Shown here: one piece after another, positions 10,893 through 64,000 of the stretch
Position numbering within the stretch: position 1 is the stretch's first letter
Layout: each line of letters opens with the position of its first letter
DNA from: Trichosphaerium sp. ATCC 40318
Taxonomy: Eukaryota; Protista; Tubulinea
Assembly (NCBI GenBank): GCA_038496445.1
Contig: JALMLS010000353.1
Coordinates: 1 to 64,000, forward strand
DNA length: 64,000 bases
Direction of reading: 5' to 3'
Translations under genes and position numbers: made by a program
The notes under the pieces: model-generated
Seen by the model: only the letters and a program-made list of their open reading frames with translations
Told to the model about the DNA's origin: nothing
Databases searched by the model: none

Positions 10893-10911
10893 CGCCATCT
10901 TTTTGAACGCA

Positions 10912-12195
10912 ATGGAAGAGCGCACTGAAAATACCAGTAGCAACGAAATCGACCTATTAGCGCTCCCAGTTGAAGTAATAGTTCATATCCTCAAACAGGG
11001 AAAATATACACTCTGTTCAGCCCAAACATGCCGCTTATTACGAGATATCGTCCATAACCATGTTGGATATGGTCAAATTATAATTACCAGAGAGAATCAA
11101 CTGAAAGTTCTTTCTCAGAGTCCGCTACTTCGGAGTTCACGTCTTAGTTTTTCGATTCGCGTTGCTCGACGTATATTAACCGACAGTCACCTGCGTTTAC
11201 TTGCAGGTGTACGCGCCATTGACATAGCATATGTACCATTGATAACAGATGAGGGTATTAAGGCATTAGCTGGTGTATATGAAATTGATTTGTCAGAAAC
11301 AAATGTAACAGATGAAGGTGTCAAGGCGTTGGCTGGCGTGCGCAAGATTAGTTTATCAAATACACGTGTAACAGATGAAGGTTTGAAGGTATTGTCAGGA
11401 GTACATACTATCGGCTTGTTTAATTGCGTAATAACAAGCGAAGGCTTGAAGGCGTTGCGTGGTGTACACACCATATACTTGGGTTGTTGTGAACACATAA
11501 CGGATGAGGGTGTAAAGGCATTGGCAGGTGTACATCATATTGATCTATCAGAAACATGCATAACAGATGAGGGTGTCAAGGCATTGGCGGGTGTACATCA
11601 TATTGATTTATCAGAAACACTCATAACAGACGAGGGTGTCAAGGCATTGGCGGGTGTACATAATATTAATTTATCAGAAACACACATAACAGATGAAGGT
11701 TTGAAGGCATTGGCTGGTGTACACACCATATACTTGGGTTGTTGTAAACAAATAACAGATGAAGGCATCAAGGCGTTGGCAGGTGTACATAACATTGATT
11801 TATCAGAAACATATGTAACAGATAAGGGGGTCAAGGCGTTGGCTGGTGTACACACTATTGACTTAGGCCGTTGTGAAATAACAGATGAGGGTGTCAAAGC
11901 ATTGACTGGTGTACACAATATTGACTTGACCCACTGTGGACAAATAACAGATGAGAGTGTAAAGACGTTGGCTGGTGTACACACCATATACTTGGGTTTT
12001 TGTGAACACATAACAGATGAAGGAATCATTGCATTGGCTGGAGTCCATGAGATTTGTTTACATAATATGAATGTAACTGATAAATGTTTGGAGGTATTGT
12101 CAGATGCACATACAGTTAAATTGTTCGACTGTAGCTCAATAACACATGAGGCCATCAAAATATTGAAGAAACATGCGAATACTTTGCACAACTAA
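10912..12195 (+). CDS. Intronless F-box-like + LRR protein (~15 repeats of 21-22 aa)
   Basis: LLALPVEVIVHIL..CSAQTCRLLRDIV (F-box-like) followed by tandem GVHxIxLSET/GCCxxITDEGVKALA repeats; single open frame. Confidence 0.88.
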   Translation: MEERTENTSSNEIDLLALPVEVIVHILKQGKYTLCSAQTCRLLRDIVHNHVGYGQIIITRENQLKVLSQSPLLRSSRLSFSIRVARRILTDSHLRLLAGVRAIDIAYVPLITDEGIKALAGVYEIDLSETNVTDEGVKALAGVRKISLSNTRVTDEGLKVLSGVHTIGLFNCVITSEGLKALRGVHTIYLGCCEHITDEGVKALAGVHHIDLSETCITDEGVKALAGVHHIDLSETLITDEGVKALAGVHNINLSETHITDEGLKALAGVHTIYLGCCKQITDEGIKALAGVHNIDLSETYVTDKGVKALAGVHTIDLGRCEITDEGVKALTGVHNIDLTHCGQITDESVKTLAGVHTIYLGFCEHITDEGIIALAGVHEICLHNMNVTDKCLEVLSDAHTVKLFDCSSITHEAIKILKKHANTLHN

Positions 12196-15207: not shown

Positions 15208-16326
15208 TTATTTGAGTGAAACTATATTGCAATCACGAATGTACTCTAATGATACAAAGTAGTCATAAGCTCTATCCAAGAAACCCCAACCGTACTCATC
15301 AAATGATTCAGTGTCTTCTACCCACAAAGCATCCAACTTTAAGTCAGTAATAAAGAAATGAGTAATTCCCCACATGCCCTCTCTAACGTTTTGGAGAGCT
15401 TCCATCAATCTAATTAAAGCTAATTTATTATCCCATGTTTCCTCACTAGAGCTCCCGTAGTATTCTTTGAGAAACGCAATGCGTGTTTTGACATCAAAGC
15501 CAGGGTTCATTGCAAATAGATTAGCAATGTCAAAAAGAGGATCGCCAACAGAACAGTACTCAAAGTCAATCAATGTCAATATATCATTCCCTTTTACATG
15601 TAATATATTGCTTGGTACAAGGTCATTATGAAGTGTTGTAATTCCAGATGATGGAGGAAGTAGAGCATTCGTTTTACGAGCATACGTAAAAATCTTTTGC
15701 AACTTTTTCCATTGTATGCTGTTTTTATCGAAACTGCCTTTCTGCTCTTTGTACAACTCTGGATATAGAGACAATCGGATCTCAGCTATTCTTAGAGGAG
15801 TATCAGGATTTTCAAAACCTAAATCCTGACTAGTGAACAAAATGCTAGAGTGAAAGTCAAGTATTAAGTGCGCGAGCTTTGCAAATGTTGGGTGCTTTGT
15901 ATTGGTCATATTAACTGGCATGAGCGGTTCAGAGTTACCCACAAACTCTGATAACACCAGACCTTCTTCTACCGAAGAAGCTATAACAGCTGGCGAGAGC
16001 CCAACATGGTTACTAGCCATAGCACATTTTACTTCATTCTCACGAATAATGCCGTGTATTCGCTTGTATTTATGGTGCTCTGGGAACTGTCTATCACCCG
16101 CAATGCGTAAAATCATATCATTACCATGTCTGTATGTTATTTTGTATTGCCTGTTAGATAAACCGCCTCCAATAGGTATCACGTGCTCTATTTTTAAATT
16201 TGTTATGTTTTCTCGTCTAAGAAGATCGTATACAATTGTTCTAATATTTGGGTGATTGCCAGTACGTGTCAATAGGTACATTATAACCATTGATGATATG
16301 CCAATAATAACGACTACTCTGAGCAT
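15208..16326 (-). CDS. Choline/ethanolamine kinase-like phosphotransferase with N-terminal membrane anchor, intronless
   Basis: GGLSN, ILRI, Brenner motif HNDLVPSNIL, LIDFEY..GDPLFDIANL; hydrophobic N-terminus. Confidence 0.85.
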   Translation of the reverse strand: MLRVVVIIGISSMVIMYLLTRTGNHPNIRTIVYDLLRRENITNLKIEHVIPIGGGLSNRQYKITYRHGNDMILRIAGDRQFPEHHKYKRIHGIIRENEVKCAMASNHVGLSPAVIASSVEEGLVLSEFVGNSEPLMPVNMTNTKHPTFAKLAHLILDFHSSILFTSQDLGFENPDTPLRIAEIRLSLYPELYKEQKGSFDKNSIQWKKLQKIFTYARKTNALLPPSSGITTLHNDLVPSNILHVKGNDILTLIDFEYCSVGDPLFDIANLFAMNPGFDVKTRIAFLKEYYGSSSEETWDNKLALIRLMEALQNVREGMWGITHFFITDLKLDALWVEDTESFDEYGWGFLDRAYDYFVSLEYIRDCNIVSLK

Positions 16327-28303: not shown

Positions 28304-30167
28304 ATGTATTCCCACATTCGTTCCATAAGGCTCTACATAGGGCCTAAACCGGTGAATCATCTCGCAAAATTACCAAATAACGTTCAATTGCAAATATGCT
28401 CTCTAGACAAAGAGTTGTTTACTAAATGGCATCTACTTTCAAAGGTACTTCTTTTCAACGACCAACAAGAAAAATCCAAAAAGATTGAATCTTTGTGTCG
28501 GTTCGTGAAATGTCACTAATTACTAAATTTAGAACTTTGCTATAAGCACTCATTTCGATATCAATCTAGACAAGAACGGCGTTTGGTATCGATGGTATAC
28601 AAGTGGGGCGTTAGCGGCGATATATTCGTTTCCTTATGGACTTCAGCAAGAGCTATACGAAAACGGTAAAATAAAGCTTCAAAGTCTTACACGTGAGAAT
28701 GAGAAAGCTGTTGTGTGTCAAAAGTTATGGACAGTTGATGGTATACTTACAGTCCTAATAAAGCGAGATGGGTTGCTTAATGGATGCGTTCTTGTCTACC
28801 ATCCTAATGGGGATATCATTGGATCTTATGAGTACATCAAAGGAAAAAGAAATGGGCTGCAACAAACTTGGAAAGATAATACAAAAATCCTTGAGTTTAA
28901 GTCGATAGACAACAAGACGCAAGGAGTCTCTAAGCGATGGTATGACAACGGACGGATCAAAATGATAGAGCAATGGAACGATGGCGTACTTGAGGGATTG
29001 TGTCAAAAGTATTACGATAACGGAGTGCTCATGAAGGAGCTCACAAACCGGGACGGTGTACCACATGGAATAGCCACAAAATTCTCAAGGTCAGGTCAAC
29101 TAAAGAAGGAGATCACATTCAATCATGGAGTTACTGAGAATATCCTACACTACACCTATGACGACAACGATGGCCTCGAGACGGTGAAACCTTATGTTGA
29201 CGGTAAACTTCACGGAACTGTGAAGACTTTCTATCCGACTGGAGAGAAGGAAGAAGAAACTCAATATATTAAAAATAAGAGGCATGGTTCACATACGGTT
29301 TGGTACAAAAATGGAAAGATAAAACTGGCGGCTTCTTTCGTTGATGGCCTACAACAAGGAGAACATAAGGAATATTATGAGAACGGGTCCATAAACCATT
29401 TAATTATGGTCCAGAACGGCAAACCTCATGGGAAGTTTAAAAAATGGTACTCAGATGGTTGTCTTGAACATGCTGGCGTTCGCGAAAAGGGTTTTGCTGA
29501 TGGCCATTTCAACTCATGGTATAATAATGAACAACTCAATGAAGTTTGCTTCTATACTAGAGGAGTTCTCATTGAAATGAAGAAGTTTTTCGAGGATGGT
29601 AGCTTGGAATTACGCTATAAAACAAGAAACGTCAATGGAAATATTGTTGTTAAGTCGAAAACAACATGGAACAAAAACGGAAACATACGTCAAAAGATTC
29701 TTAGTACAGGAGAAGTCACAGAATGGTATAGCACTGGAGAGAAACGTAAGCAGTATTTTGTTGATCTTAGAGAATCACGTGGTAATGTATTGCATGGACA
29801 GTACAAGCAATGGAGGAAAAATGGTAAAATCGCTGAAGAGAAAGTGTACAAAAAGGGTATTGCTTTGCATACTGTTAAGTATCATGACAATGGAGCAGTA
29901 GCGTTTTTGAAGAGTGGAACAAGGATGTGTAAGCAAATGTATGACAATGGAGCGATGAAGATGGAAAGGTCAAATGCAGGAGAAACCACGGAGTGGTATG
30001 AAAGTGGTCAAAAGAAAAAACAATACTTCGTTGTCTATGTTTGCGGAGTAGATGTTAAACATGGTATGTACAAAGAATGGAACGAAAGTGGAAGTCTTCA
30101 TAAGGTGAGTTATTACAATAGAGGTACCAAACTGAGTGAAGCAGTTAAAGCTCCTAGAATTGAATAA
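28304..30167 (+). CDS. F-box-like + MORN-variant (YwqK-like) repeat protein, one intron 28445-28532
   Basis: LAKLPNNVQLQIC..FTKWHLLSK spliced to NFAISTHFD..GVWYRWY, in frame with the 484-aa ORF of WYxNG/DGxxHG repeats. Confidence 0.85.
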
Positions 30168-30720
30168 CTTTGTAGTTTAATAAATAAACGTGATAAGGAA
30201 TATTGTGAGAAACATACAAATACTGTTCGTGTTTGCTTTGAAACTCCTTTCCCGGTAGCAAGGATATGTCAGGAACTAGATATATGGTTGTCTATATATT
30301 ACTTCTACATGTACAACCACATAAATTGATGCTAAACGCAAAGAGCACCGCGATTGTACATTAAGTCTTGTTAACCTCTAATTTAAGCGGCGTTCAAGGT
30401 TTTTCAATCCAAAAGCTTCAGTCGACACTGGTCGCTACTAGCAAGTATAGATACCGAATAATTTTCGTTGGTTGACGAGTAACCAAGCTAGCGCCAAACC
30501 TAAATGAACACGTGTTAAATAAGATTTGAAATTTTAATTCAAAAATGGTATGTAAAAACACCACGTGTACACAGCAATTCTGTTTTGCGAATGACAAATT
30601 TCAAGCTAAATCACTGCTTCGTTTGGGTCCATGCTTTGATAGTAACAAGCGCAACTACCCTCTCTAGGTTTTTTGACCTTTGATATTGAACTAGCGCTAC
30701 TATCTTTTTTATCCTTCTCC

Positions 30721-30806
30721 AGTTAGTCAATCGCCCGTTCATTATCTATTTTCTTTGCCTTAAAAACTGTTGTTGATATGACTTTTGAACAGGCGATTGA
30801 CTAACT
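30721..30806. repeat. 21-bp inverted repeat (one mismatch) with 44-nt spacer
   Basis: agttagtcaatcgcccgttca (30721-30741) vs tgaacaggcgattgactaact (30786-30806). Confidence 0.85.
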
Positions 30807-30877
30807 TCTGATTACTGAGATACTTTTACACTCTAACATCTGTTTTTTTAAAGTCTGGTCCCCAACACAAAAAACAA

Positions 30878-31918
30878 TTGGGCAGTAAATTGGGTTCCTT
30901 GAGTATACTGGATATTCCAAGTGAACTTCAAACCTATATTTGTACCTTTAATAAGGAAACGTTCACAAAATTCCATACTCTATCAAAGAGAGCTGCAACA
31001 AATACACATTTTGATGAAACATTAAAACGGAAAGGGGTATGGATAAGATGGTATAAAAGCGGAAAGGTACAGTCTCATTTTCATGAAGTGAATAGGTTGT
31101 ATAAAGAATGGTATTCAAACGGAGTACTTAAGCTACAGTACATATCGGCTACTGGTGAAGATAAAGTATGGTATGATGGTAAACCGCATGGTGAATGCAA
31201 ATTATGGTATGAAAATGGACAACTTCATGAGCAGTCCATGTGGGCTGATGGTAAACAGCATGGTGAAAGTAAAGAGTGGTATGAAAGTGGACAAATTAAG
31301 AGGCAATTGATGTGGGTTGATGATAAACTGCATGGTGAAGGTAAAGAATGGTATGAAAATGGACAACTTGGAAAACAATCCGTGTGGGTAGATGGTAAAC
31401 TACATGGTGAAGGCAAACTATGGTATGAAAATGGTCAACTTCAGGAGCATTACATGTGGGCTGATGGTAAACAGCATGGTGAAATTAAAGAGTGGTACAA
31501 AAGTGGCCAGCTTGTAAGACAATTCATGCGGGTAGAAGGTAAACTGCATGGTGAAGGCAAAGTATGGTATGAAAATGGACAACTTAGAGAGCTAGGCAAC
31601 TGGGTTGATGGTAAACAACATGGCGAAAGCAAATATTGGTATGAAAATGGACAACTCCAGGAGCATTCCATGTGGGTAGACGGTAAACAGCATGGTGTAG
31701 AAAAATTATGGTATGAAAATGGACAACTTGAAGAGCTAGGCAACTGGGTTGATGGTAAACAACATGGTGAATGTAAATTATGGTATGAAAATGGACAACT
31801 TAAAGAGCTAGGCAACTGGGTTGCTGGTAAACTACATGGTGAAAGGAAATTATGGTATGAAGATGGACAACTACAGTATCAAAATACTTGGGCTAATGGT
31901 AAAGAAAGGGAAACTTGA
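30878..31918 (+). CDS. Intronless F-box-like + MORN-variant repeat protein (~10 x 24 aa); start codon anomalous (aaaacaATTGggc)
   Basis: (M)GSKLGS, ILDIPSELQTYIC, then WYENGQLxExxxWxDGKxHGExKx repeats of 72 nt. No in-frame ATG until deep inside the repeats. Confidence 0.8.
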   Translation: MGSKLGSLSILDIPSELQTYICTFNKETFTKFHTLSKRAATNTHFDETLKRKGVWIRWYKSGKVQSHFHEVNRLYKEWYSNGVLKLQYISATGEDKVWYDGKPHGECKLWYENGQLHEQSMWADGKQHGESKEWYESGQIKRQLMWVDDKLHGEGKEWYENGQLGKQSVWVDGKLHGEGKLWYENGQLQEHYMWADGKQHGEIKEWYKSGQLVRQFMRVEGKLHGEGKVWYENGQLRELGNWVDGKQHGESKYWYENGQLQEHSMWVDGKQHGVEKLWYENGQLEELGNWVDGKQHGECKLWYENGQLKELGNWVAGKLHGERKLWYEDGQLQYQNTWANGKERET

Positions 31919-55855: not shown

Positions 55856-58800
55856 TTATTGTTTACGTGATGCTTTGTACTCTGATGATAATATACGCAT
55901 AATATCGCCATGTGATTTTGTAGGATGCTTAGATTTAATTCTTGAGAAATTTGCCTTAACAAACAAAGTGTACGGGTTTGCTTTAGGCGTTTTTCGTGGT
56001 GTACCATCCTTATTTAGTTTAGGAAGAAGCTTGAAGCGTCCGTTACACCTTCCACAACGAGCACGGTCAAGTTTGAGAGAGTTAGAGTGGCGACCAACAC
56101 TACAAAAAAATTGTAAGCATGGAGATGAAATACTTTAAAATTCTAATTCTTCGTACGTGTATCCACAGCCCTGACACTTATAATTGAACTTGAACTTAAT
56201 ATCATAGTTATGACAACGTGTTACTTTAACATCTGGGAATACTATAGAAGCCCTCTCTCCCCTTAACAGTAACGTCAGTACAAAACATTTAAAACTTTTG
56301 CAAAAAAGCTACAGAAAACAAACAAACTAACTTACCATCTATAGAAAGTAGCTCCATGTGGCGGTTGTCTTATACCATCAATAATCCAAGCAGCTGCGTG
56401 ACACAACTCATGAACAAGAGTACTCTTACAACGCCTGAAAGAATCGACAACTTTTGTTGCCAAGCGGATAGAAGCAACTCTCTTTGACTTGTCCGCAGAA
56501 TACTACATTAAAAAAATGTCAGAAAGAAAACTTAACACCAACTAGGAGCATTGACGTACACCACAAGATGTTGTGCCCGCTGTTTGGCGTAGTGTAACAG
56601 ACCAGGTTATTTCAAGGTCATAAGGTAAAGCACCATGACAAACACCATCGTTGAATTTCCTGAAAATCTCCTTTGCAAAAGCATCTCGTTTCTTATTGAA
56701 TCCATGACATGTAGGTGACTTAATCGGTGTACGCTTGATAGTATACGTTCTAGCTGGTGTCCTTGGGGTGCGTTCTACACGCTTCGGAGTACGCTTCGTA
56801 TTCGTAGGCGTACGCTTCACTCTAGTTGGTGTGCGTTTCGTGCTGGATATAGGAGTGCGCTTTGAGATTGTTGGAGTGCGTTTTGTGTTAGTTGGAGTCC
56901 TGTGAATGAGCTTTGTTGATTTCGGTGGTGAACTCATTTTTGGTGTTGGAGGCATAGGCGATAGAGGCTTTCTGTTAAGGATAGCTAAAAAAGAAACTCG
57001 TGTAAGTAAAAAACAAGAAAAAAAAAAGAAAACAGTTTTTTGGCGCTGCTACTTACGTAGTTTATAAGGAGTAGATAATCCGTATCCATCATTTTCATCA
57101 TTATCACTAATAACAACCTTATTATCATTATCATCACCATCAACATCATCAGGTACACAAAAATCATTAAAAGCATAAGAATCCAAGTCTTCATCTTTAG
57201 CATAATCTCTAAAGTAAAAAATCACGTGAGCACGTTATTTTCATCCAAATAAAAGATTGTATTGAGTACGTACATGTTCGTCAAAACACGTCGTTCATCA
57301 TCTTCCTGTTCATCAGAAGATGTATCACTGAACCCACTTTCACTCTCACTATCGCTTAAGATATTTGGCATAGCGAGTTGTGAAGCTGTTGGTGTGTTAC
57401 TACCTGTATTAATTGGTCGTTGTAGGCGCTTCAGAGTCTTCTTCTTTGGAACAACATCATCTTCCAAACTCTTTAGTAAATCATTGTTGTCATCAAAAGA
57501 GTATCCTATCGAGGCATCCAAGTTGTCAAGGTCAATATCATCAATATCTAGATTATCACTAGTAGATTCTATACTTGATACTGATTGTTGAGATGCTGGA
57601 AGAGGTAGTAGTGATTGTCTCTTAGACGAAGGTCTGATTTCCGGAGAAGGCACGTGAGGAGATTGTGGTGCGCTATCTGATTCGAAGGCAAATGACTTTG
57701 CGGAAGAAGACGATGTTGCTCTAGATTGAGACTTTGGGAGTGGTAGTAATGGCCGAGATGCTGGTTTAATTCCTGGAGAAGGTACTCGAGAAGATTGGAC
57801 ATTTCCTGAATCGAAAGAAAATGAGGACATCGAAGAAGATGACGTTCTATCATTGGCTTTCACTGGTGATATTTTCTCAGCTTCTTCCATTTCTTGATTC
57901 TGTTCAACCTCAGTTAATCGTGGAGATACACTCTCTGAAGCTTTCACAGCTGCATCTTTTTTCTGAGAAAAAAAAGAGTTAGAACTTGACTTTAAGAAGA
58001 AAATCAAGACGTACATCCATGTTAATGAGTAATGATCTAAGTTCTTCTATGGAATCATAATCAGATTCAGAGCAAGAAGAGGAGGCTGAGTCAGAATTCT
58101 CATAAGAATCATAAGGAGAAAGATACCCATCTTCTTCTTTCTTTTTATCTTCCTCTAAATCCCAAGAAACACTTCTTTGAACACGAGGAGTTTTTAAGAC
58201 CTCGACAGGCATTTCAAGTTTATCTTCTTCTGAAGCACTTTGATCATCATCTTCAACAAGTGCAGCAAGGAGCCTACCAGGTGCAAACATACGAGATCTC
58301 TTAGAAGATTTTGATGGCTTCTTTTCAGCAGGCTCATCAACAGAGTTCGAGGGTTCTGTATCTGCTTCTGCTTTCATAAAAGAGTTTGGTCGGATAGGTT
58401 GAGGCGGTTGAGGGGCTTCAACATCAGCAAATGTTGTTTCTTGGTCTTCTTCGTCTTCATTTGTTTCTATTGGTTCCACATCATTTGATACATGATGGAC
58501 AGGCGCTTGAGTTACAGCCAATTCTTCATCGCTTTCAGAATCGCTCATATTTGTTATAAAATCATCTGAACAGCTACTTTCTGCTTCTTCTTTTTCCTCA
58601 CTTGGCTCTTGAGGCATAATGCCAACAGAACGAATATCATCAACAGTAGGTTTTGCTTCAACAACTGGTTCCGGAACTTCATTGTAACCGATGTCGCTCA
58701 TATCAGTAGATTCAACAGCTTCATCATCACTTGTATCATCATCTCGCTCTTCTTCTTGTGCATCTGCGCTACGAGGAACCTCGAGAGATAGTTCTGTACG

Positions 58801-61800
58801 CTCGTTGATGTCAGAATGAGGATAATCGCTCAAATCTGATGCCGAAGTGATGTAATCATCTTCTTCACTTTCAGACGCTTCACCATCATTGTCTGTGGCT
58901 TCAACTTGGTGAGATACTCGTCTTTGGATGCTTGTTCTTGGCGTAGATGATACGTTATCGTGTTCATCTTCACCACTTTCAGAAGCATCATCACTGTCCT
59001 CTACATCATCCATGTTGATTGGTACCACAGATGCACGCCTGTCAAGAACTTTCGTTGGTGTTGAAGCATTCTCTTCATCAATAGAAGAGTCGTCGGACAT
59101 TTCAGATTCACAAACACTGACAACTTCAGAGTCACTATCACTGCCATCAGACTCAATATCATTGGTAGCAATTGGCATGGTCTCGGCATGTTTGTTGTCA
59201 TCTTCTTCAGAAGCACTAGTATGTGCTGAGATTTGTTCTTCAAAATCAGAAGCTTCATTAATTTCAGCCTCCTCAGCTTCAACCTCAGTGTCGTCAAGAT
59301 CTGATTCTTCACCGTAAGCGTTTTCAACCTTTGCAACCTCATTCGTCACTTCTAAGTTCGGTGTCTCATAAAATTGCTCCACAATATCATGTGCTTCCTC
59401 CTTAAACAAGAAGTGAGTAAAGATAAAACCAAAAGAGAGAAAAAATGTTTTTTGCAACTGTTTTGACTCTTGTACCTCATGACACTCTTCTTCAGGTATT
59501 TGTAGGTCTTCTACGGCATTAATAGTATCTACAGCTAACACTTCATGATCTTCATCGTTTCCGGGTTGATCTAGTTCATCAGAACTGGAGTGAATAGAGT
59601 TTTCTTCTTCTTCGATTTCTGTATCTCTCTCAGTCTCATCAACAGAGCTTGTATCGTGGTCAACAGCATCATCACACAAATTACTTGCATCTGAAGTGTC
59701 AGTTTCGTCCAAAGGTATTTCCTCAGCAATATCGAGCGCATGAGTGTCTTGAACATCGTCTGCGCCATTGACATCTAAACCTGACATTTCCTGTACTAGG
59801 TCATCGACTTCGTAATAGCTTTCATATTCTCCTCCTTCTGCTTTTTCAAGTTCAGCACCAACTTCAAGAGCTGAACTTGTTTGCGAATCATTCTCTGTGT
59901 CAAAAGAAGGATCAGTCATACTAGTTTCAACGCTTTCTTGGTTTTCATCGCTAGTTTCGAGTACTTCTTCCGCATCGGCATTGTTTGGAGTAAATGCAGC
60001 AGGTACAGTGTGATCTTGTTCGTGATCACTGATACCATCATCACCTTCGCAAACCGCGCCTTCATACTCCTCATTTTCAGCTTCGAGGAAGCGTTCGTCT
60101 TCAGGTCTGTTATCAACTTCGATAACTTGTTCTTCTTCCACTCTTGATACATTTTCAAAATCAGCAAGCACAGAGTCTCCGTATTCAGAGTTGTCCTCAA
60201 TTTGAATTTTAACAGAGGCTATATCATCTCCGTCTACAATACTAGTTTCTTCGATAGCATAGTCAGCTACCTTGCTATGCACATCGTCGCAAACCCCTTC
60301 ACTAAGCGCTGCAGCATCCCCGTATTCGGAATTATTTTCGATTTGAATCTCAAGAGAGGCAACATCATCTTCAGGTATGTCATTAACTTCTTCAACAACG
60401 CATTCTTCTTCCTCACTTGACACAAGGTCTACTACATTTGAATTGTCGTGTTCATCGTCACTATCGAGAAGAGCAATACACTCGGCAACCTTGTCTTCTA
60501 TACCACGTGACGCTTCCTCAGCATCATCTTCATTGTACGTACTATAGCCGTCACCAGCTTCGACCATTTCGCCCTCAGCGTAGTCACCTTATACAATGTA
60601 AATACAAAGACAAAGAATTACAAGCACAAAAACGTACTGCCATCAGAGCCGTAAGGGTCATCAGCTTGAGCTTCGACAATTTCGTCATCTGGTACAATAA
60701 ACCCATCATATTCATACTCATTAGGGGCATTTCTTTCAGCTTCTTCTTCAGCGTCACTAACACCAATATACTCTGATGTATTCGCTGGTCCACGTGGAAA
60801 TACATTCCTAGGTTGTGACGGCACATCATTGGCGTAGTCGTCCAAACTCAAATCAGCCAGGAGATCAATAACATTATTCGTATCTCCTCGTCTCACTCTT
60901 GGTACACTCACTCTATCAGTTTTTCTTGGAGTAGAAGCAGATAGGCTCTTTTCAGCAGCCTAGACAACAACAAAAGTTAGAAGACATGAAAACAAAACAA
61001 CAAAAAAGAGAAAGACTTCTAACAAACACACGTACAATAACATGAGCGTTTGTCTCAGCTTGTAAAGCGAATAACTCATCAGCAGTCTCTTCAGAGAAGA
61101 GCAAGTCATGATCAGATACGCCAAAGATACCAATAGAACGCATGTACTTAATATGTTCTTCCAAATCTAAAAATAGAAGAAAAAAAATTAGTTGGTTGAT
61201 GTTATGTAACTATCACTACGATTATAATATCATCATACCTGGTGCAGTGTTTCTCTTTCCTGCATGGATCTTGGCAAGCATGCGTTGTGTTGGCGAATCA
61301 AATGGGTCAGTAAAAGAGAACGGTTTGTCTTTTCCAGTAAAGTAACGATGTTGTTTATGTTGCTTATTGATAAGAGACTTTGAGAAGGCTCCCTTTAGTA
61401 CTTGCTTGCGGTACATATATTCTTCAATAGTACCACATGTCATTAGCCTGAAAGAAATATGTTAGAACAAACAAACCTTAACAAAGCAAAACCGATAGAC
61501 GAAACAAAAAAAGTAACAAAGTTAAGTACCTGTAAATCACGACATTCTTGTTTTGACCGATACGATAACATCTATCTACAGCTTGGTCGTCGACCTTATT
61601 CCAAGCTAAAGGTTCGTTAGAATTCATTGATGCAAGGAAACCACGACAGAGCAAAAAGTAAGATAATAAACGTACAAGGATCAAAAATGATAACTCTATC
61701 AGCGCCATTTAAGTTTAATCCAACACCTCCAGCTTGTGTTGTCATAAGCAATAGAAAGTTGCTTTCATCATTATTAAATTCCTCAACGTATATTTGACGA

Positions 61801-64000
61801 TCATCAATATCAGTAGACCCGTCAATACGAAGATGTTTATAGCCCTAGAACGAAAAATGAGAAAAATAGGCTTTAGAAAAAAACAAACAGACACTAACCT
61901 CAGGTTTGAGCAAGTGCTCCTCTACCAAGTCAAGGACCTTTGTGAATCTACTGAATATGAGGACACGATGCCCTTCAGCCTTGAGATTCTTGAGTATTTT
62001 CTTAGCGAAGGCAAACTTGCACGACTGATCAATGATAGTTCCAGGCAAACTAAACCAAAAGTGTTAGGAATCAAGTTACATATTTTGTAGTACTCTTTTA
62101 TGAGAAGCTCAACTTCTGGGTTAGCTTCAGAGTGCATCAAACGAGGATGCTGACAAATAGTCTTCATCAAGCTGATAGCAGACAAAGGCGAGTCTGTTTT
62201 ATTTAAGGCCTAAAGAAAGTTCATTTTATTGTGTAAAGGGAGAAAAAAACAAGAAAGCTGCTTTTATACCTTTCGGACGGCTGGCATGTTTATAAACTTG
62301 TTGTAAATAGAAATCTGACACTCAGTAAGTGTTAGCCATACAACAAGGTCATTCTTTCTTCCCTTGATGTTCAAGTTTTTCAACTAAAATAGAAAGTTAG
62401 GCAAAGCACATCTATTCTCAAAGAAAAGACTTCGAATTTCTTACCTCACGCTTTTCACGACGTAAAAAGTATGGTGCAATTAGATTGCGTAGAGACTCCT
62501 CCATTTTAAAACCAAGCTCCTTTTCAAAGGCTGTAGCTTTCTTATCGTGACTCTGTAAAGAAAATCATCAGACACAAAGATTTGCAAGCCATGACAAAAA
62601 ATTCTTTTGGACGTACACGAATTATCTTGGTTTCGTACTCCCTTTTAAACGTACGATAATCACCCATCAAGGTACCATTACAAGCCCAGTCGAACAGCGC
62701 CCATAATTCCTTTGAATATAAATCAGTAAAAGCCAAAAAACAGAAAAGAATCATCGTACCTTGTGGTTGTTCATAATTGGAGTACCAGTCAATAAAATTT
62801 TATGTCTCGCTGGTACTTTTCTTAAAGCAATGGACCGTTTTTTCTTTGCGTCCTTGATGTTATGTCCTTCATCAAGAATAACATAATCCCACTTGAATTC
62901 TTCATCATCACTATCAAGATATTTACCAGCAAGAAGATCGGTATTAGTGCGAACCATATCTAACATTGTTGTCAAGAGAAGAATAAAAAACAGAAAAAAA
63001 TAAGAAAAGTAAACGTACCGTAAGTGGTCAGTACAATACCACCTGATTGCATAATATCATGCACCATGCGCTTTCTTTGTAACTTTGTTTTGTCACTTAG
63101 AAGAGTTCCAAGGACAGGTTGACCCTTAGTAATAAGCCTACATTTAGTTAGAACAAAGATCTAGAAAAAACTTGATCTAACAAACTATAGCGTACCATTT
63201 ATCAAGTTCTTGCATCCAATTCAGCAACACTGACTTTGGCAATACTAATAGAACATTGAATGCGTAACCACATCCAAGAACACCATATAGAAAGGCAATA
63301 ACCTTAACAAGACATAAGTCAGACTCGAAAAATTAACAAAGTCTCTTTGCTACACACCTGTATTGTTTTTCCCAAACCCATATCATCGCCCATTATTCCT
63401 CCAGAATTCTTTAAATGGAGATCCCACAGGAATTTTACACCATCACGTTGATGCCTAAGAAACAGATCAGACTCAACAAACACGAAACAAACAAAAAGAG
63501 AAACTTACTTGTATAGTTTCTCGTAAATGCTCGCAGGTATACGAAACCTCTCCTCTCTGTTTGTAGCAAAAGGTCTCAACATATAGAACTTTGCAAGGTC
63601 ACCATTACGTTTTGTACGTATTGTCCTGAACCAAGAATTTTCAAGCTCCTTAGTGCAAGTCAAAAAAAAACTTAAAAAAAATTGAAGAAGAAAAATCTTT
63701 TTTTAAAGCACGCGGGCTAACATACCTCATATTCGGTGTTACCTTTCACACACCTACGTACAACGCGTTCGTTTGTTGGCGTCAATTTAGGCTTTAGTTT
63801 GCCATCAGGAGAACGCACAACATCAACGACTTGTTCAGTAGGCTTAGGAAACAATGAAGGATCGTCTTCAGGATCAGGTTGTGTTGTACCACAAATAGAA
63901 ACGCGTCTAGACTTACGCTTCTTAGGTGCAGGAGAAAGAAGCATATTAGGCTTGGGTAGGGATTGCTTCTGAGGTGAGGCGTTTGGTTTGTCCACAGGTT
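55856..64000 (-). CDS. PICH/ERCC6L-type SNF2 translocase fused via an acidic disordered linker to a GCNA/ACRC-type SprT protease + Zn finger + HMG-like box (5' partial)
   Basis: GDDMGLGKTIQ, WDYVILDEGH, TGTPIMNN..ELWALFDWAC, PYFLRR, RKNDLVVW, HPRL, QAVDRCYRIGQ, GVSDHDLLF; all downstream junctions splice in frame to LRQTAG..TLVHELCHAAAW..HG..VTRCHNY..CQGC..CGRC..NPYTLFVK. Confidence 0.8.
56715..56955 (-). repeat. KRTP heptad-like coding repeat (about a dozen S/T-P sites)
   Basis: RTPTNTKRTPTISKRTPISSTKRTPTRVKRTPTNTKRTPKRVERTPRTP directly before the SprT domain. Confidence 0.85.

What the first reader, a model, noticed from the sequence alone, without database searches (positions are those of the whole stretch)
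55856..64000. Apparent PICH(ERCC6L)-GCNA fusion: DNA translocase and DNA-protein-crosslink protease in one polypeptide
Seen: on the minus strand the PICH-specific tail (GVSDHDLLF) does not terminate. Every junction I traced is a GT-AG intron that preserves frame: 61035>60960 (phase 0), 60637>60588 (A|GT), 59475>59401, 58014>57963, 57273>57209 (AT|A), 57056>56985 (C|CT), then the SprT exons. Only ~50 nt separate the unspliced stop at 60618 from ATG 60567, too little for a terminator plus promoter. The HELCH zinc motif, CxxC/CxxC finger and HMG-like tail are intact. Established: PICH is a SUMO-binding dsDNA translocase that works with topoisomerase II on ultrafine anaphase bridges. GCNA is an IDR+SprT protein linked to removal of SUMOylated DNA-protein crosslinks, including Top2 adducts. 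In animals they are separate genes. Inference: a >2000-aa machine that translocates to and proteolyses trapped Top2 in mitosis/meiosis, and a Rosetta-stone hint that the two pathways are coupled. I do not know of a described example but cannot search.
Basis: partly seen in the sequence, partly recalled or inferred. Interest (0 to 1): 0.92.

Follow-up and report, generated by a model that had tools for sequence, protein, structure and literature searches.

The report
PICH-like helicase fused to GCNA protease
This amoeba gene most likely makes one giant protein that joins a DNA-tracking motor (PICH-like) to a protease that removes proteins stuck on DNA (GCNA). The same unusual join is predicted in a distant relative of animals, which hints that the two repair systems work together.

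Summary
On the minus strand, 24 exons joined by 23 GT-AG introns (44-82 nt) give one open frame of at least 2234 aa. It contains an SNF2 motor with a PICH-type post-helicase motif, a ~1300-aa acidic region with SUMO-interaction-like motifs, and a complete GCNA module (SprT HELCH protease, zinc ribbon, HMG-like tail).

The critical 50-nt junction intron (60637-60588) has this gene's commonest donor (GTACGT) and intron-like composition. One contig of an independent public run (probably RNA) lacks exactly this intron. That contig has only 21 nt on the upstream side.

An architecture search found one other protein with the same layout: CFRG1346T1 of the ichthyosporean Creolimax fragrantissima (2012 aa). 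It is collinear with the window protein at both ends. Its motor half resembles animal ERCC6L (PICH) most closely.

No fusion appeared among 150 other closest SprT proteins, 85 metagenomic GCNA loci or six other contigs. No paper in the library describes it.

Not settled:
- whether retaining the junction intron (stop at 60620-60618, ATG at 60567) also yields separate PICH and GCNA proteins;
- whether the two fusions share one origin.

Verdict: a real, probably expressed fusion gene. It is a new variant of known kinds, and its mechanism is inferred. The scan holds only a duplicate first-reader note on this same stretch (s1-390483).

The parts
61036..63998 (-). PICH-like SNF2 translocase part: 15 exons (model residues 1-701). 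Motifs GLGKT (res 164), DEGH (275), TGTP (303), QAVDR..RIGQ (570) and the post-helicase 'GVSDHDLLF' motif in exon 61166-61036. The N-terminus may continue beyond the window edge.
   Evidence: Gene model. Pfam SNF2-rel_dom and Helicase_C on exons. 35% identity to P0203 through the helicase and post-helicase motif, against 31-32% to CSB-like proteins. Motif positions.
60638..60959 (-). Last exon before the junction (107 aa). Acidic and disordered-looking, with SUMO-interaction-like stretches (NNVIDLLADLS, DGFIVPDDEIVE). It has no in-frame ATG.
   Evidence: Translation. No Pfam family.
60588..60637 (-). Junction intron: 50 nt, GTACGT...TATAAG, phase 1. If retained, the frame ends at TAA 60620-60618.
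   Evidence: One 174-nt contig of run X1 joins 60638 to 60587 exactly, with 21 nt and 153 nt on the two sides.
57057..60587 (-). Acidic disordered region: exons 60587-59476, 59400-58015, 57962-57274 and 57208-57057. The whole region (residues 702-2013) is 26% D+E, pI 4.05, with SIM-like motifs such as VVDLVSSEEEE. The first in-frame ATG after the junction is at 60567.
   Evidence: No homologues of 474-1508 aa found. 13 non-synonymous against 5 synonymous codon differences in run X1 and no indels.
59401..59475 (-). In-frame, stop-free 75-nt intron inside the acidic region. Retaining it would insert 25 mostly hydrophobic residues.
   Evidence: An X1 contig ends exactly at 59476.
55856..56984 (-). 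GCNA catalytic module: exons 56984-56560 (basic KRTP repeats plus the first part of SprT), 56502-56336 (HELCH...PPHG), 56261-56157 (CxxC) and 56099-55856 (CGRC zinc ribbon, HMG-like tail, stop TAA 55858-55856).
   Evidence: Pfam SprT-like 2.5e-11, Zn_ribbon_SprT 0.006, HMG_box 3.6e-5. Alignment with 22 GCNA-type modules. phmmer up to 6.6e-62 against stand-alone GCNA-like proteins.

Best explanation
This is one gene whose spliced mRNA encodes a single polypeptide of about 2230 aa or more. It has three parts: an N-terminal PICH/ERCC6L-like SNF2 double-stranded-DNA translocase, a ~1300-aa acidic disordered linker with SUMO-interaction-like motifs, and a C-terminal GCNA module (SprT zinc metalloprotease, zinc ribbon, HMG-like DNA-binding tail).

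Shown here:
- the continuous spliced frame;
- the intact catalytic motifs of both enzymes;
- removal of the junction intron in one public contig;
- the same architecture in a distant eukaryote.

Inferred mechanism, from what is published for the separate animal proteins: the linker's SIM-like motifs bring the protein to SUMO-modified proteins trapped on DNA, such as topoisomerase II adducts. The motor tracks along duplex DNA up to the obstacle, and perhaps pulls on it or remodels it. The tethered SprT protease then degrades it.

Retaining the 50-nt junction intron would end the frame after the PICH part. The gene may therefore also yield a motor-only isoform. This is not shown.
For: - Gene model: 24 exons, 23 GT-AG introns of 44-82 nt and no in-frame stop over 2234 codons.
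- Junction intron: it has the gene's commonest donor, GTACGT, which starts 8 of 23 introns and occurs only 3 times inside exons. Its composition is more intron-like than any exon 50-mer.
- Upstream exon: the exon before the junction has no ATG and is already acidic and SIM-like, so the disordered region runs across the junction.
- Spliced contig: a 174-nt contig of public run X1 (95-99% identical strain, depth 5.3) joins 60638 to 60587 exactly, with GT..AG ends. No X1 contig covers any intron, and another ends exactly at exon edge 59476.
- Second example: P0203 (EukProt CFRG1346T1, 2012 aa) carries SNF2-rel_dom 98-420, Helicase_C 452-564, SprT-like 1778-1891, Zn_ribbon_SprT and HMG_box. The CFRG prefix is that of Creolimax fragrantissima.
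- Collinearity: P0203 aligns with the window protein at both ends, at 33% identity (E 1e-93) and 43% identity (E 1e-54). It ranks 5th of 259 by GCNA-module similarity.
- Subfamily: the motor half of P0203 is closest to clusters named 'DNA excision repair protein ERCC-6-like' (0.98, against 0.93 for other SNF2 groups).
- Published background: PICH is recruited by SUMOylated TOP2A and co-operates with Topo II. GCNA/ACRC uses SIMs and acts on TOP2 crosslinks on mitotic and meiotic chromosomes (PMC9019546 and PMC9289515).
Against: - The RNA evidence is one short contig. Only 21 nt lie upstream of the joint, under the tool's own 31-nt rule for bridging, and the run is only guessed to be RNA.
- No read or contig links the helicase exons to the SprT exons.
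- The joint could belong to a GCNA-only transcript that starts inside exon 60959-60638, with a spliced 5' leader and ATG 60567.
- A stop lies 6 codons into the retained intron, and an in-frame ATG follows 50 nt later.
- Earlier notes on this genome describe genes that touch end to start and are co-transcribed.
- P0203 is an unverified gene prediction, and I could not fetch its genomic locus. Other SprT 'fusions' in the same list look like merged models.
- No fusion was found in 150 closest SprT representatives, 85 metagenomic GCNA loci or six other contigs.
Confidence: 0.72

Rival explanations
1. Two separate genes in tandem, PICH-like upstream and GCNA downstream, packed 50 nt apart and perhaps co-transcribed as in an operon. 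PICH ends at TAA 60620-60618 on unspliced RNA. GCNA starts at ATG 60567. The observed splice is read-through, or the spliced 5' leader of a GCNA transcript. The fused protein would then be rare or absent.
For: - Stop in the retained intron and an in-frame ATG 50 nt later.
- GCNA is a stand-alone gene in every other locus examined.
- Earlier notes report touching, co-transcribed genes in this amoeba.
- The splice evidence reaches only 21 nt upstream.
- Gene predictors do merge neighbouring genes, for example P0207 (kinase + SprT).
Against: - The donor is a perfect copy of the gene's commonest donor, and the phase keeps the frame.
- The spliced form exists.
- The same two genes, in the same order and in frame, are joined in a gene model from a different eukaryotic supergroup. 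That is very unlikely for unrelated neighbours.
- Even under this rival, conserved adjacency would mean that the two genes are functionally coupled.
Confidence: 0.22
2. Both products are made from one gene. Splicing of the 50-nt intron gives the fusion. Retention gives a PICH-only protein ending ...GSDGSTFLCL*. The junction intron thus acts as a switch between a plain translocase and a translocase-protease.
For: - The in-frame stop lies 6 codons into the intron.
- Animal cells need PICH in all dividing cells but GCNA mainly in the germ line (PMC9289515). Separate control would therefore make sense.
Against: No unspliced contig was seen at the junction, although coverage is very thin. Most introns contain stops, so this one is not special. 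No expression data were available.
Confidence: 0.3
3. Assembly artefact: two unrelated loci were joined in the assembly near 60600.
For: None specific. I could not map reads of the source genome.
Against: An independent run's contig spans the junction in spliced form, and neighbouring contigs match at 95-99%. There is no composition break beyond a normal intron. The same architecture occurs in Creolimax.
Confidence: 0.02

Closest known systems
CFRG1346T1 (P0203), predicted protein of Creolimax fragrantissima (Ichthyosporea), EukProt
   Same: Same order of parts: SNF2-rel_dom, Helicase_C, 'GVS.HD' post-helicase motif, ~1000-1300-aa acidic Ser/Thr-rich linker with SIM-like motifs, SprT-like, SprT zinc ribbon, HMG-like tail.
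   Different: Only 33-35% (motor) and 43% (protease module) identical. The linkers share no detectable similarity. It has a TPR-like N-terminus that is not seen in the window. It is an unstudied gene model whose locus I could not inspect. A shared origin is not resolved.
PICH / ERCC6L (animals; plant ENL1 is reported as its counterpart, from my own knowledge)
   Same: SNF2 motor with complete ATPase motifs. It shares with P0203, and not with CSB, the signatures 'D[WY].C.G', 'K[DK]AT', 'DPSWN', 'QAVDR.YRIGQ', 'TCGT.EE' and the post-helicase 'H I ... G V S. H D' motif. It is followed by an acidic tail with SIM-like motifs. PICH binds SUMOylated TOP2A and works with Topo II (PMC9019546, PMC9289515).
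   Different: The tail does not end but continues into a protease. The N- and C-terminal TPR repeats and the Plk1-docking site of animal PICH were not found or could not be tested. No animal PICH sequence could be brought into the tools, so direct comparison rests on P0203 and on my memory of the human sequence.
GCNA / ACRC (Carmell et al. 2016, PMC5098910; e.g. Dictyostelium Q54JE2, C. elegans GCNA-1)
   Same: Long, fast-evolving acidic disordered region with SIMs, then the SprT HExxH protease, a zinc ribbon and an HMG box. All four parts are present here.
   Different: Known GCNAs are stand-alone proteins. Here the disordered region has no start codon of its own upstream of the junction and is preceded in frame by a helicase.
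Helicase- or unfoldase-assisted crosslink proteolysis: SPRTN with FANCJ or p97, Wss1 with Cdc48 (from my own knowledge; p97-SPRTN in PMC9019546)
   Same: An ATP-driven motor prepares or reaches the crosslinked protein for a SprT-family protease. This is what the fusion would do within one chain.
   Different: Those motors are separate proteins of other families (an SF2 Fe-S helicase, an AAA+ unfoldase), and they are recruited by ubiquitin, SUMO or adaptors rather than by covalent fusion.

Membership tests
GCNA/ACRC family | SprT-like zinc metalloprotease domain with an intact HExxH and a third His | tested here: met
   Pfam SprT-like, E 2.5e-11 (43.8 bits, cut-off 25.6), on exon 56502-56338. 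HELCH...PPHG aligns with 22 GCNA-type modules.
GCNA/ACRC family | C4 zinc ribbon after the protease domain | tested here: met
   CxxC (CQGC) and CGRC align with the conserved Cys columns. Pfam Zn_ribbon_SprT reaches only E 0.006 on the last exon, which holds half of the ribbon.
GCNA/ACRC family | C-terminal HMG box | tested here: inconclusive
   Pfam HMG_box E 3.6e-5 at 24.6 bits, just under the 25.4-bit cut-off, and only profile positions 5-42 of 69 are matched. It aligns with the tails of other GCNA modules.
GCNA/ACRC family | Long acidic intrinsically disordered region with SUMO-interaction motifs N-terminal to the protease | tested here: met
   1312 aa, 26% D+E, pI 4.05, with SIM-like motifs. 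No Pfam family. Fast-evolving. Disorder itself was not predicted with a tool.
GCNA/ACRC family | Whole-module sequence similarity to known GCNAs | tested here: met
   The 231-aa C-terminal query gives phmmer E-values down to 6.6e-62. Hits include proteins named SPRT-like metalloprotease (Ostreococcus), Acidic repeat-containing protein (Eufriesea) and HMG box-containing protein C19G7.04-like.
PICH / ERCC6L subfamily of SNF2 | SNF2 ATPase core with complete motifs | tested here: met
   Pfam SNF2-rel_dom and Helicase_C on exons. GLGKT, DEGH, TGTP and QAVDR..RIGQ are present.
PICH / ERCC6L subfamily of SNF2 | Closer to PICH than to CSB/ERCC6 or other SNF2 subfamilies | tested here: inconclusive
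   35.1% identity to P0203 against 30.5-31.8% to two CSB-like proteins, with shared signatures that CSB lacks. P0203's motor is nearest to ERCC-6-like clusters in the Atlas (0.98 against 0.93). The test is indirect: the spliced window protein could not be given to the database tools, a single-exon Atlas query was uninformative, and single-exon PDB searches did not discriminate.
PICH / ERCC6L subfamily of SNF2 | PICH family domain after the helicase | tested here: inconclusive
   'EEHIKYMRSIGIFGVSDHDLLF' aligns with 'QVHIDNIISLNSVAGVSRHDILQ' of P0203 and is absent from CSB-like proteins at that place. There is no Pfam model or solved structure for it. Its likeness to the human motif rests on my memory only.
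PICH / ERCC6L subfamily of SNF2 | Flanking TPR repeats | not testable with these tools
   No family was found on the two N-terminal exons. The N-terminus may lie beyond the window edge. The C-terminal TPR position is taken by the GCNA part.
PICH / ERCC6L subfamily of SNF2 | SUMO-interaction motifs in the tail | tested here: met
   SIM-like hydrophobic cores with acidic/Ser flanks in exon 60959-60638 (read from the translation) and further on. This is pattern matching only.

The most novel reading that the evidence does not exclude
The PICH-GCNA fusion is ancestral to the group that unites Amoebozoa and Opisthokonta. The separate PICH and GCNA genes of animals would then have arisen by a split inside the SIM-rich disordered linker. 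That would explain why both carry long acidic SIM-bearing tails and both act on SUMOylated topoisomerase II on mitotic chromosomes. It would also predict that they still act as one functional unit in animals. As a lead from memory only, not checked here: human ERCC6L and ACRC both map to Xq13.1.
Probability: 0.15. Interest if true: 0.85.

Novelty: new variant of a known kind. Interest (0 to 1): 0.68.

Why it matters
PICH and GCNA are studied as separate players. PICH is a translocase drawn to SUMOylated Topo II on mitotic DNA. GCNA is a SIM-bearing protease that removes Topo II and other DNA-protein crosslinks, mainly in germ cells.

No paper in the searched library links them mechanistically. 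The five papers that name both mention them in separate passages in the two I read.

A natural fusion found in two distant eukaryotes is a classic Rosetta-stone hint that the two act in one pathway: a motor that finds or loads onto the obstacle and a protease that destroys it. This gives animal-cell biologists several directly testable ideas:
- PICH-GCNA interaction;
- epistasis under etoposide, ICRF-193 or formaldehyde;
- co-localisation on ultrafine bridges.

It also offers a single-chain model protein for studying motor-coupled crosslink proteolysis.

Tried and rejected
- **RNA evidence.** Only one run (X1, 6% of words, guessed RNA) was offered.
- **Acidic ORF search (862 aa).** No hits of 474-1508 aa. 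So no stand-alone GCNA annotation of this organism, or of a close relative, is in the collection.
- **First 100 aa after the junction.** I searched for transcript-derived peptides that cross the junction and found nothing.
- **SprT-exon search of 1.84 billion representatives.** 1266 hits. The best 150 are all 997 aa or shorter, and none has SNF2 similarity.
- **Metagenome scan with a GCNA-module profile.** The first alignment was too diverse. The second gave 80 loci. None is fused to an SNF2 gene. Three of them (L063, L068, L070, the last two near-duplicates) hold a CSB-like gene, not PICH-like, 3-4 kb away on the other strand, which I read as ordinary synteny.
- **Contigs of seven close GCNA homologues.** Six showed no SNF2 gene on the contig. 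In the seventh (P0143) the gene starts 158 nt from the contig end, so it is uninformative.
- **Subfamily test for the window motor.** Single exons are too short: PDB searches hit many SNF2 groups or nothing, and an Atlas query with one exon was uninformative. The spliced protein could not be handed to the database tools without typing it, which I did not do.
- **GCNA-module tree.** Deep forks are unresolved, so it cannot tell whether the amoeba and Creolimax fusions share an origin.
- **Bacterial promoter/terminator scan of the junction.** Not applicable to a eukaryote and empty.
- **Creolimax locus.** It is not on record.


Full report
**1. What is in the sequence**

The window is eukaryotic DNA with short introns. 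Earlier notes of this scan call the organism an amoeba.

I traced the minus strand from the window edge to 55856. A dynamic-programming pass followed by hand refinement gave 24 exons and 23 introns. Every intron is GT-AG and 44-82 nt long. The open frame has 2234 codons and ends at TAA 55858-55856.

Pfam recognises the following on window exons:
- SNF2-rel_dom on exons 63453-63358 and 62957-62760, and Helicase_C on 61844-61677.
- SprT-like (E 2.5e-11) on 56502-56338.
- Zn_ribbon_SprT (E 0.006) and HMG_box (E 3.6e-5, just under the curated cut-off) on the last exon.

The catalytic motifs of both enzymes are intact: GLGKT, DEGH, TGTP, QAVDR..RIGQ, and HELCH...PPHG with CxxC/CxxC.

Between the two enzymes lie 1312 residues with 26% Asp+Glu, pI 4.05, several SUMO-interaction-like motifs and no Pfam family.

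**2. The critical junction**

After the exon carrying GVSDHDLLF (61166-61036) comes a 76-nt intron, then a 107-aa exon (60959-60638). That exon is already acidic and SIM-like and contains no ATG.

The junction intron follows at 60637-60588. It is 50 nt long, reads GTACGT...TATAAG, and is phase 1, so A|GT encodes Ser. If it is retained, the frame ends at TAA 60620-60618. An in-frame ATG follows at 60567.

GTACGT is the donor of 8 of the 23 introns and occurs only three times inside 6705 nt of exon. The 50 nt are 54% T. Their intron-versus-exon composition score (11.5) exceeds that of every 50-nt window of exon (maximum 7.5). Composition alone would also fit an intergenic spacer. The donor, the acceptor and the phase are what make it look like an intron.

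**3. Read evidence**

Only one public run was offered. X1 holds 6% of the sampled words, is kept as contigs, and has its kind guessed as RNA.

Laid on 56000-61400, it gave seven short contigs, six of them 95-99% or more identical, so it comes from a related strain.

- One 174-nt contig (depth 5.3) matches 60656-60636 and 60585-60433. The 50 nt between are missing, and the ends read CT..AC on the plus strand with the cut shifted by 2. This is exactly the predicted intron 60637-60588.
- No X1 contig covers any intron.
- Another contig ends exactly at exon edge 59476.

This pattern is what RNA would give. If the run were DNA, it would mean a relative with a continuous frame, which supports the reading equally.

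The limitation is real. Only 21 nt lie upstream of the joint, under the tool's 31-nt rule for bridging. An exact 21-mer at precisely the predicted donor cannot be chance. However, it does not show that the transcript began in the helicase exons.

The 18 codons that differ between X1 and the window in the acidic region are 13 non-synonymous and 5 synonymous, with no indels. This fits the fast-evolving disordered region described for GCNA (PMC5098910).

**4. Comparative evidence**

The tools could not take the spliced protein, so I searched by parts.

- The acidic ORF and the first 100 residues after the junction found nothing.
- The SprT exon found 1266 proteins among 1.84 billion representatives. 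The best 150 are at most 997 aa, and none has SNF2 similarity.
- The contigs of seven of the closest GCNA-like proteins, and 80 metagenomic GCNA loci, show stand-alone genes or are uninformative. Three of these loci (two of them near-duplicates) hold a CSB-like gene 3-4 kb away on the other strand.

I then used a 1211-aa GCNA ORF from a metagenome contig as the query. This let the length filter admit proteins of up to about 2100 aa, and only its SprT region was scored.

Among 109 hits, one carries SNF2-rel_dom, Helicase_C and SprT-like: P0203, EukProt CFRG1346T1, 2012 aa. The CFRG prefix is the gene-identifier style of Creolimax fragrantissima, an ichthyosporean.

A fresh Pfam scan of P0203 gives SNF2-rel_dom 98-420, Helicase_C 452-564, SprT-like 1778-1891, Zn_ribbon_SprT 1897-1935 and HMG_box 1949-1987.

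P0203 is collinear with the window protein:
- Window residues 118-730 align with P0203 77-708 at 33% identity, E 1e-93.
- Window residues 2017-2229 align with P0203 1768-1986 at 43% identity, E 1e-54.
- An unrelated acidic, Ser/Thr-rich, SIM-bearing linker lies between the two in each protein.

P0203 ranks 5th of 259 proteins by similarity of the GCNA module.

**5. Which SNF2 subfamily**

A four-way alignment shows the window motor 35% identical to P0203 and 31-32% identical to two CSB-like proteins.

The window protein and P0203 share signatures that the CSB-like proteins lack: D[WY]xCxG, K[DK]AT, DPSWN, QAVDRxYRIGQ, TCGTxEE, and the post-helicase HI...GVSxHD motif.

The first 760 residues of P0203 are closest to ESM-Atlas clusters named 'DNA excision repair protein ERCC-6-like'. 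These score 0.98 with 223-229 of 256 features shared, against 0.93 for ENL1, RAD54 and ISWI-type clusters.

From memory, the same signatures are those of human PICH.

I therefore call the motor PICH-like, but the subfamily test on the window protein itself is indirect. Single-exon queries to the PDB and the Atlas did not discriminate.

**6. Interpretation**

The best explanation is a genuine fusion gene (confidence 0.72).

The main rival is two tightly packed, perhaps co-transcribed genes whose junction splice is read-through or a 5' leader (0.22). It is kept alive by:
- the stop and ATG arrangement at the junction;
- the thin RNA evidence;
- earlier notes of touching, co-transcribed genes in this genome;
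- the fact that gene predictors merge neighbours, as in P0207 and P0259.

Against this rival, the same two genes would have to be immediate same-strand, in-frame neighbours in both an amoebozoan and a relative of animals. That would itself imply selection for coupling.

A mixed model is plausible but untested. In it, the spliced form is the fusion and the intron-retained form is the motor alone.

Misassembly is unlikely.

The mechanism is inferred from the literature on the separate animal proteins (PMC9019546 and PMC9289515; bioRxiv 10.1101/570200). In this reading, SIMs target SUMOylated trapped proteins such as Topo II, the motor tracks to the obstacle, and the SprT protease degrades it.

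**7. Novelty**

I found no paper describing an SNF2-SprT or PICH-GCNA fusion:
- The GCNA family paper and later GCNA/ACRC papers contain no such statement.
- No paper pairs Creolimax with SprT.
- No paper pairs ACRC with ERCC6L.
- Five papers name both GCNA and PICH. In the two I read, they are mentioned in separate passages.

The architecture does exist in a public proteome as an unnamed prediction, so it is not entirely unseen.

The GCNA-module tree is unresolved at depth and does not place the two fused proteins together. One ancient fusion and two independent fusions both remain open.

No stand-alone PICH or GCNA has been noted, which is not evidence of absence.

**8. Verdict**

- Observation: confirmed.
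- Interpretation: partly supported. The gene structure and a second example are supported. The single full-length protein and its role are not yet shown.
- Class: new variant of known kinds.
- Interest: 0.68.

Noticed in passing
window 56740-56930, minus strand: A block of about ten basic 'KRTP(T)' repeats lies directly before the SprT domain (TRF period 21 at 56852-56898). Creolimax P0203 also has a basic patch at this place. It could be a DNA-binding or proline-directed phosphorylation region.
   Followed up: partly
window about 60350 and 60215; about 57780 and 57650, minus strand: Two short motifs each occur twice inside the otherwise featureless acidic linker: 'AS[LV]xIQIE[ND]NSEYGD' and 'VPSPxI[KR]PxS...LLPLPxSQ'. 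I read them from the translation. A self-BLAST at E 1e-3 did not report them.
   Followed up: partly
window 59401-59475, minus strand: An in-frame, stop-free 75-nt intron. Retaining it would insert 25 mostly hydrophobic residues into the acidic linker. An X1 contig ends exactly at its donor edge, 59476.
   Followed up: partly
L063:1264-8021; L068:2635-9416; L070: In picoeukaryote metagenome contigs of very different G+C content, a GCNA gene and a CSB-like SNF2 gene lie 3-4 kb apart on opposite strands, with similarly sized and oriented ORFs between them. This looks like ordinary conserved synteny, not a fusion.
   Followed up: partly
P0198, P0207, P0259: Other predicted proteins join a GCNA-type SprT module to RING/PHD fingers, to a PDK1-like kinase (Borealophlyctis) or to WD40 repeats (Leucocoprinus). 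They are real fusions or merged gene models, and I did not check which.
   Followed up: no
window 58986-60463: Run X1 differs from the window at 21 positions in the acidic linker: 13 non-synonymous and 5 synonymous codons, with no indels. The linker evolves fast but stays in frame.
   Followed up: yes
window 10903-12195 (+), 15208-16326 (-), 28713-31918 (+): The neighbouring long ORFs are ordinary: an F-box/leucine-rich-repeat protein, a choline/ethanolamine-kinase-like protein and two MORN-repeat proteins.
   Followed up: partly
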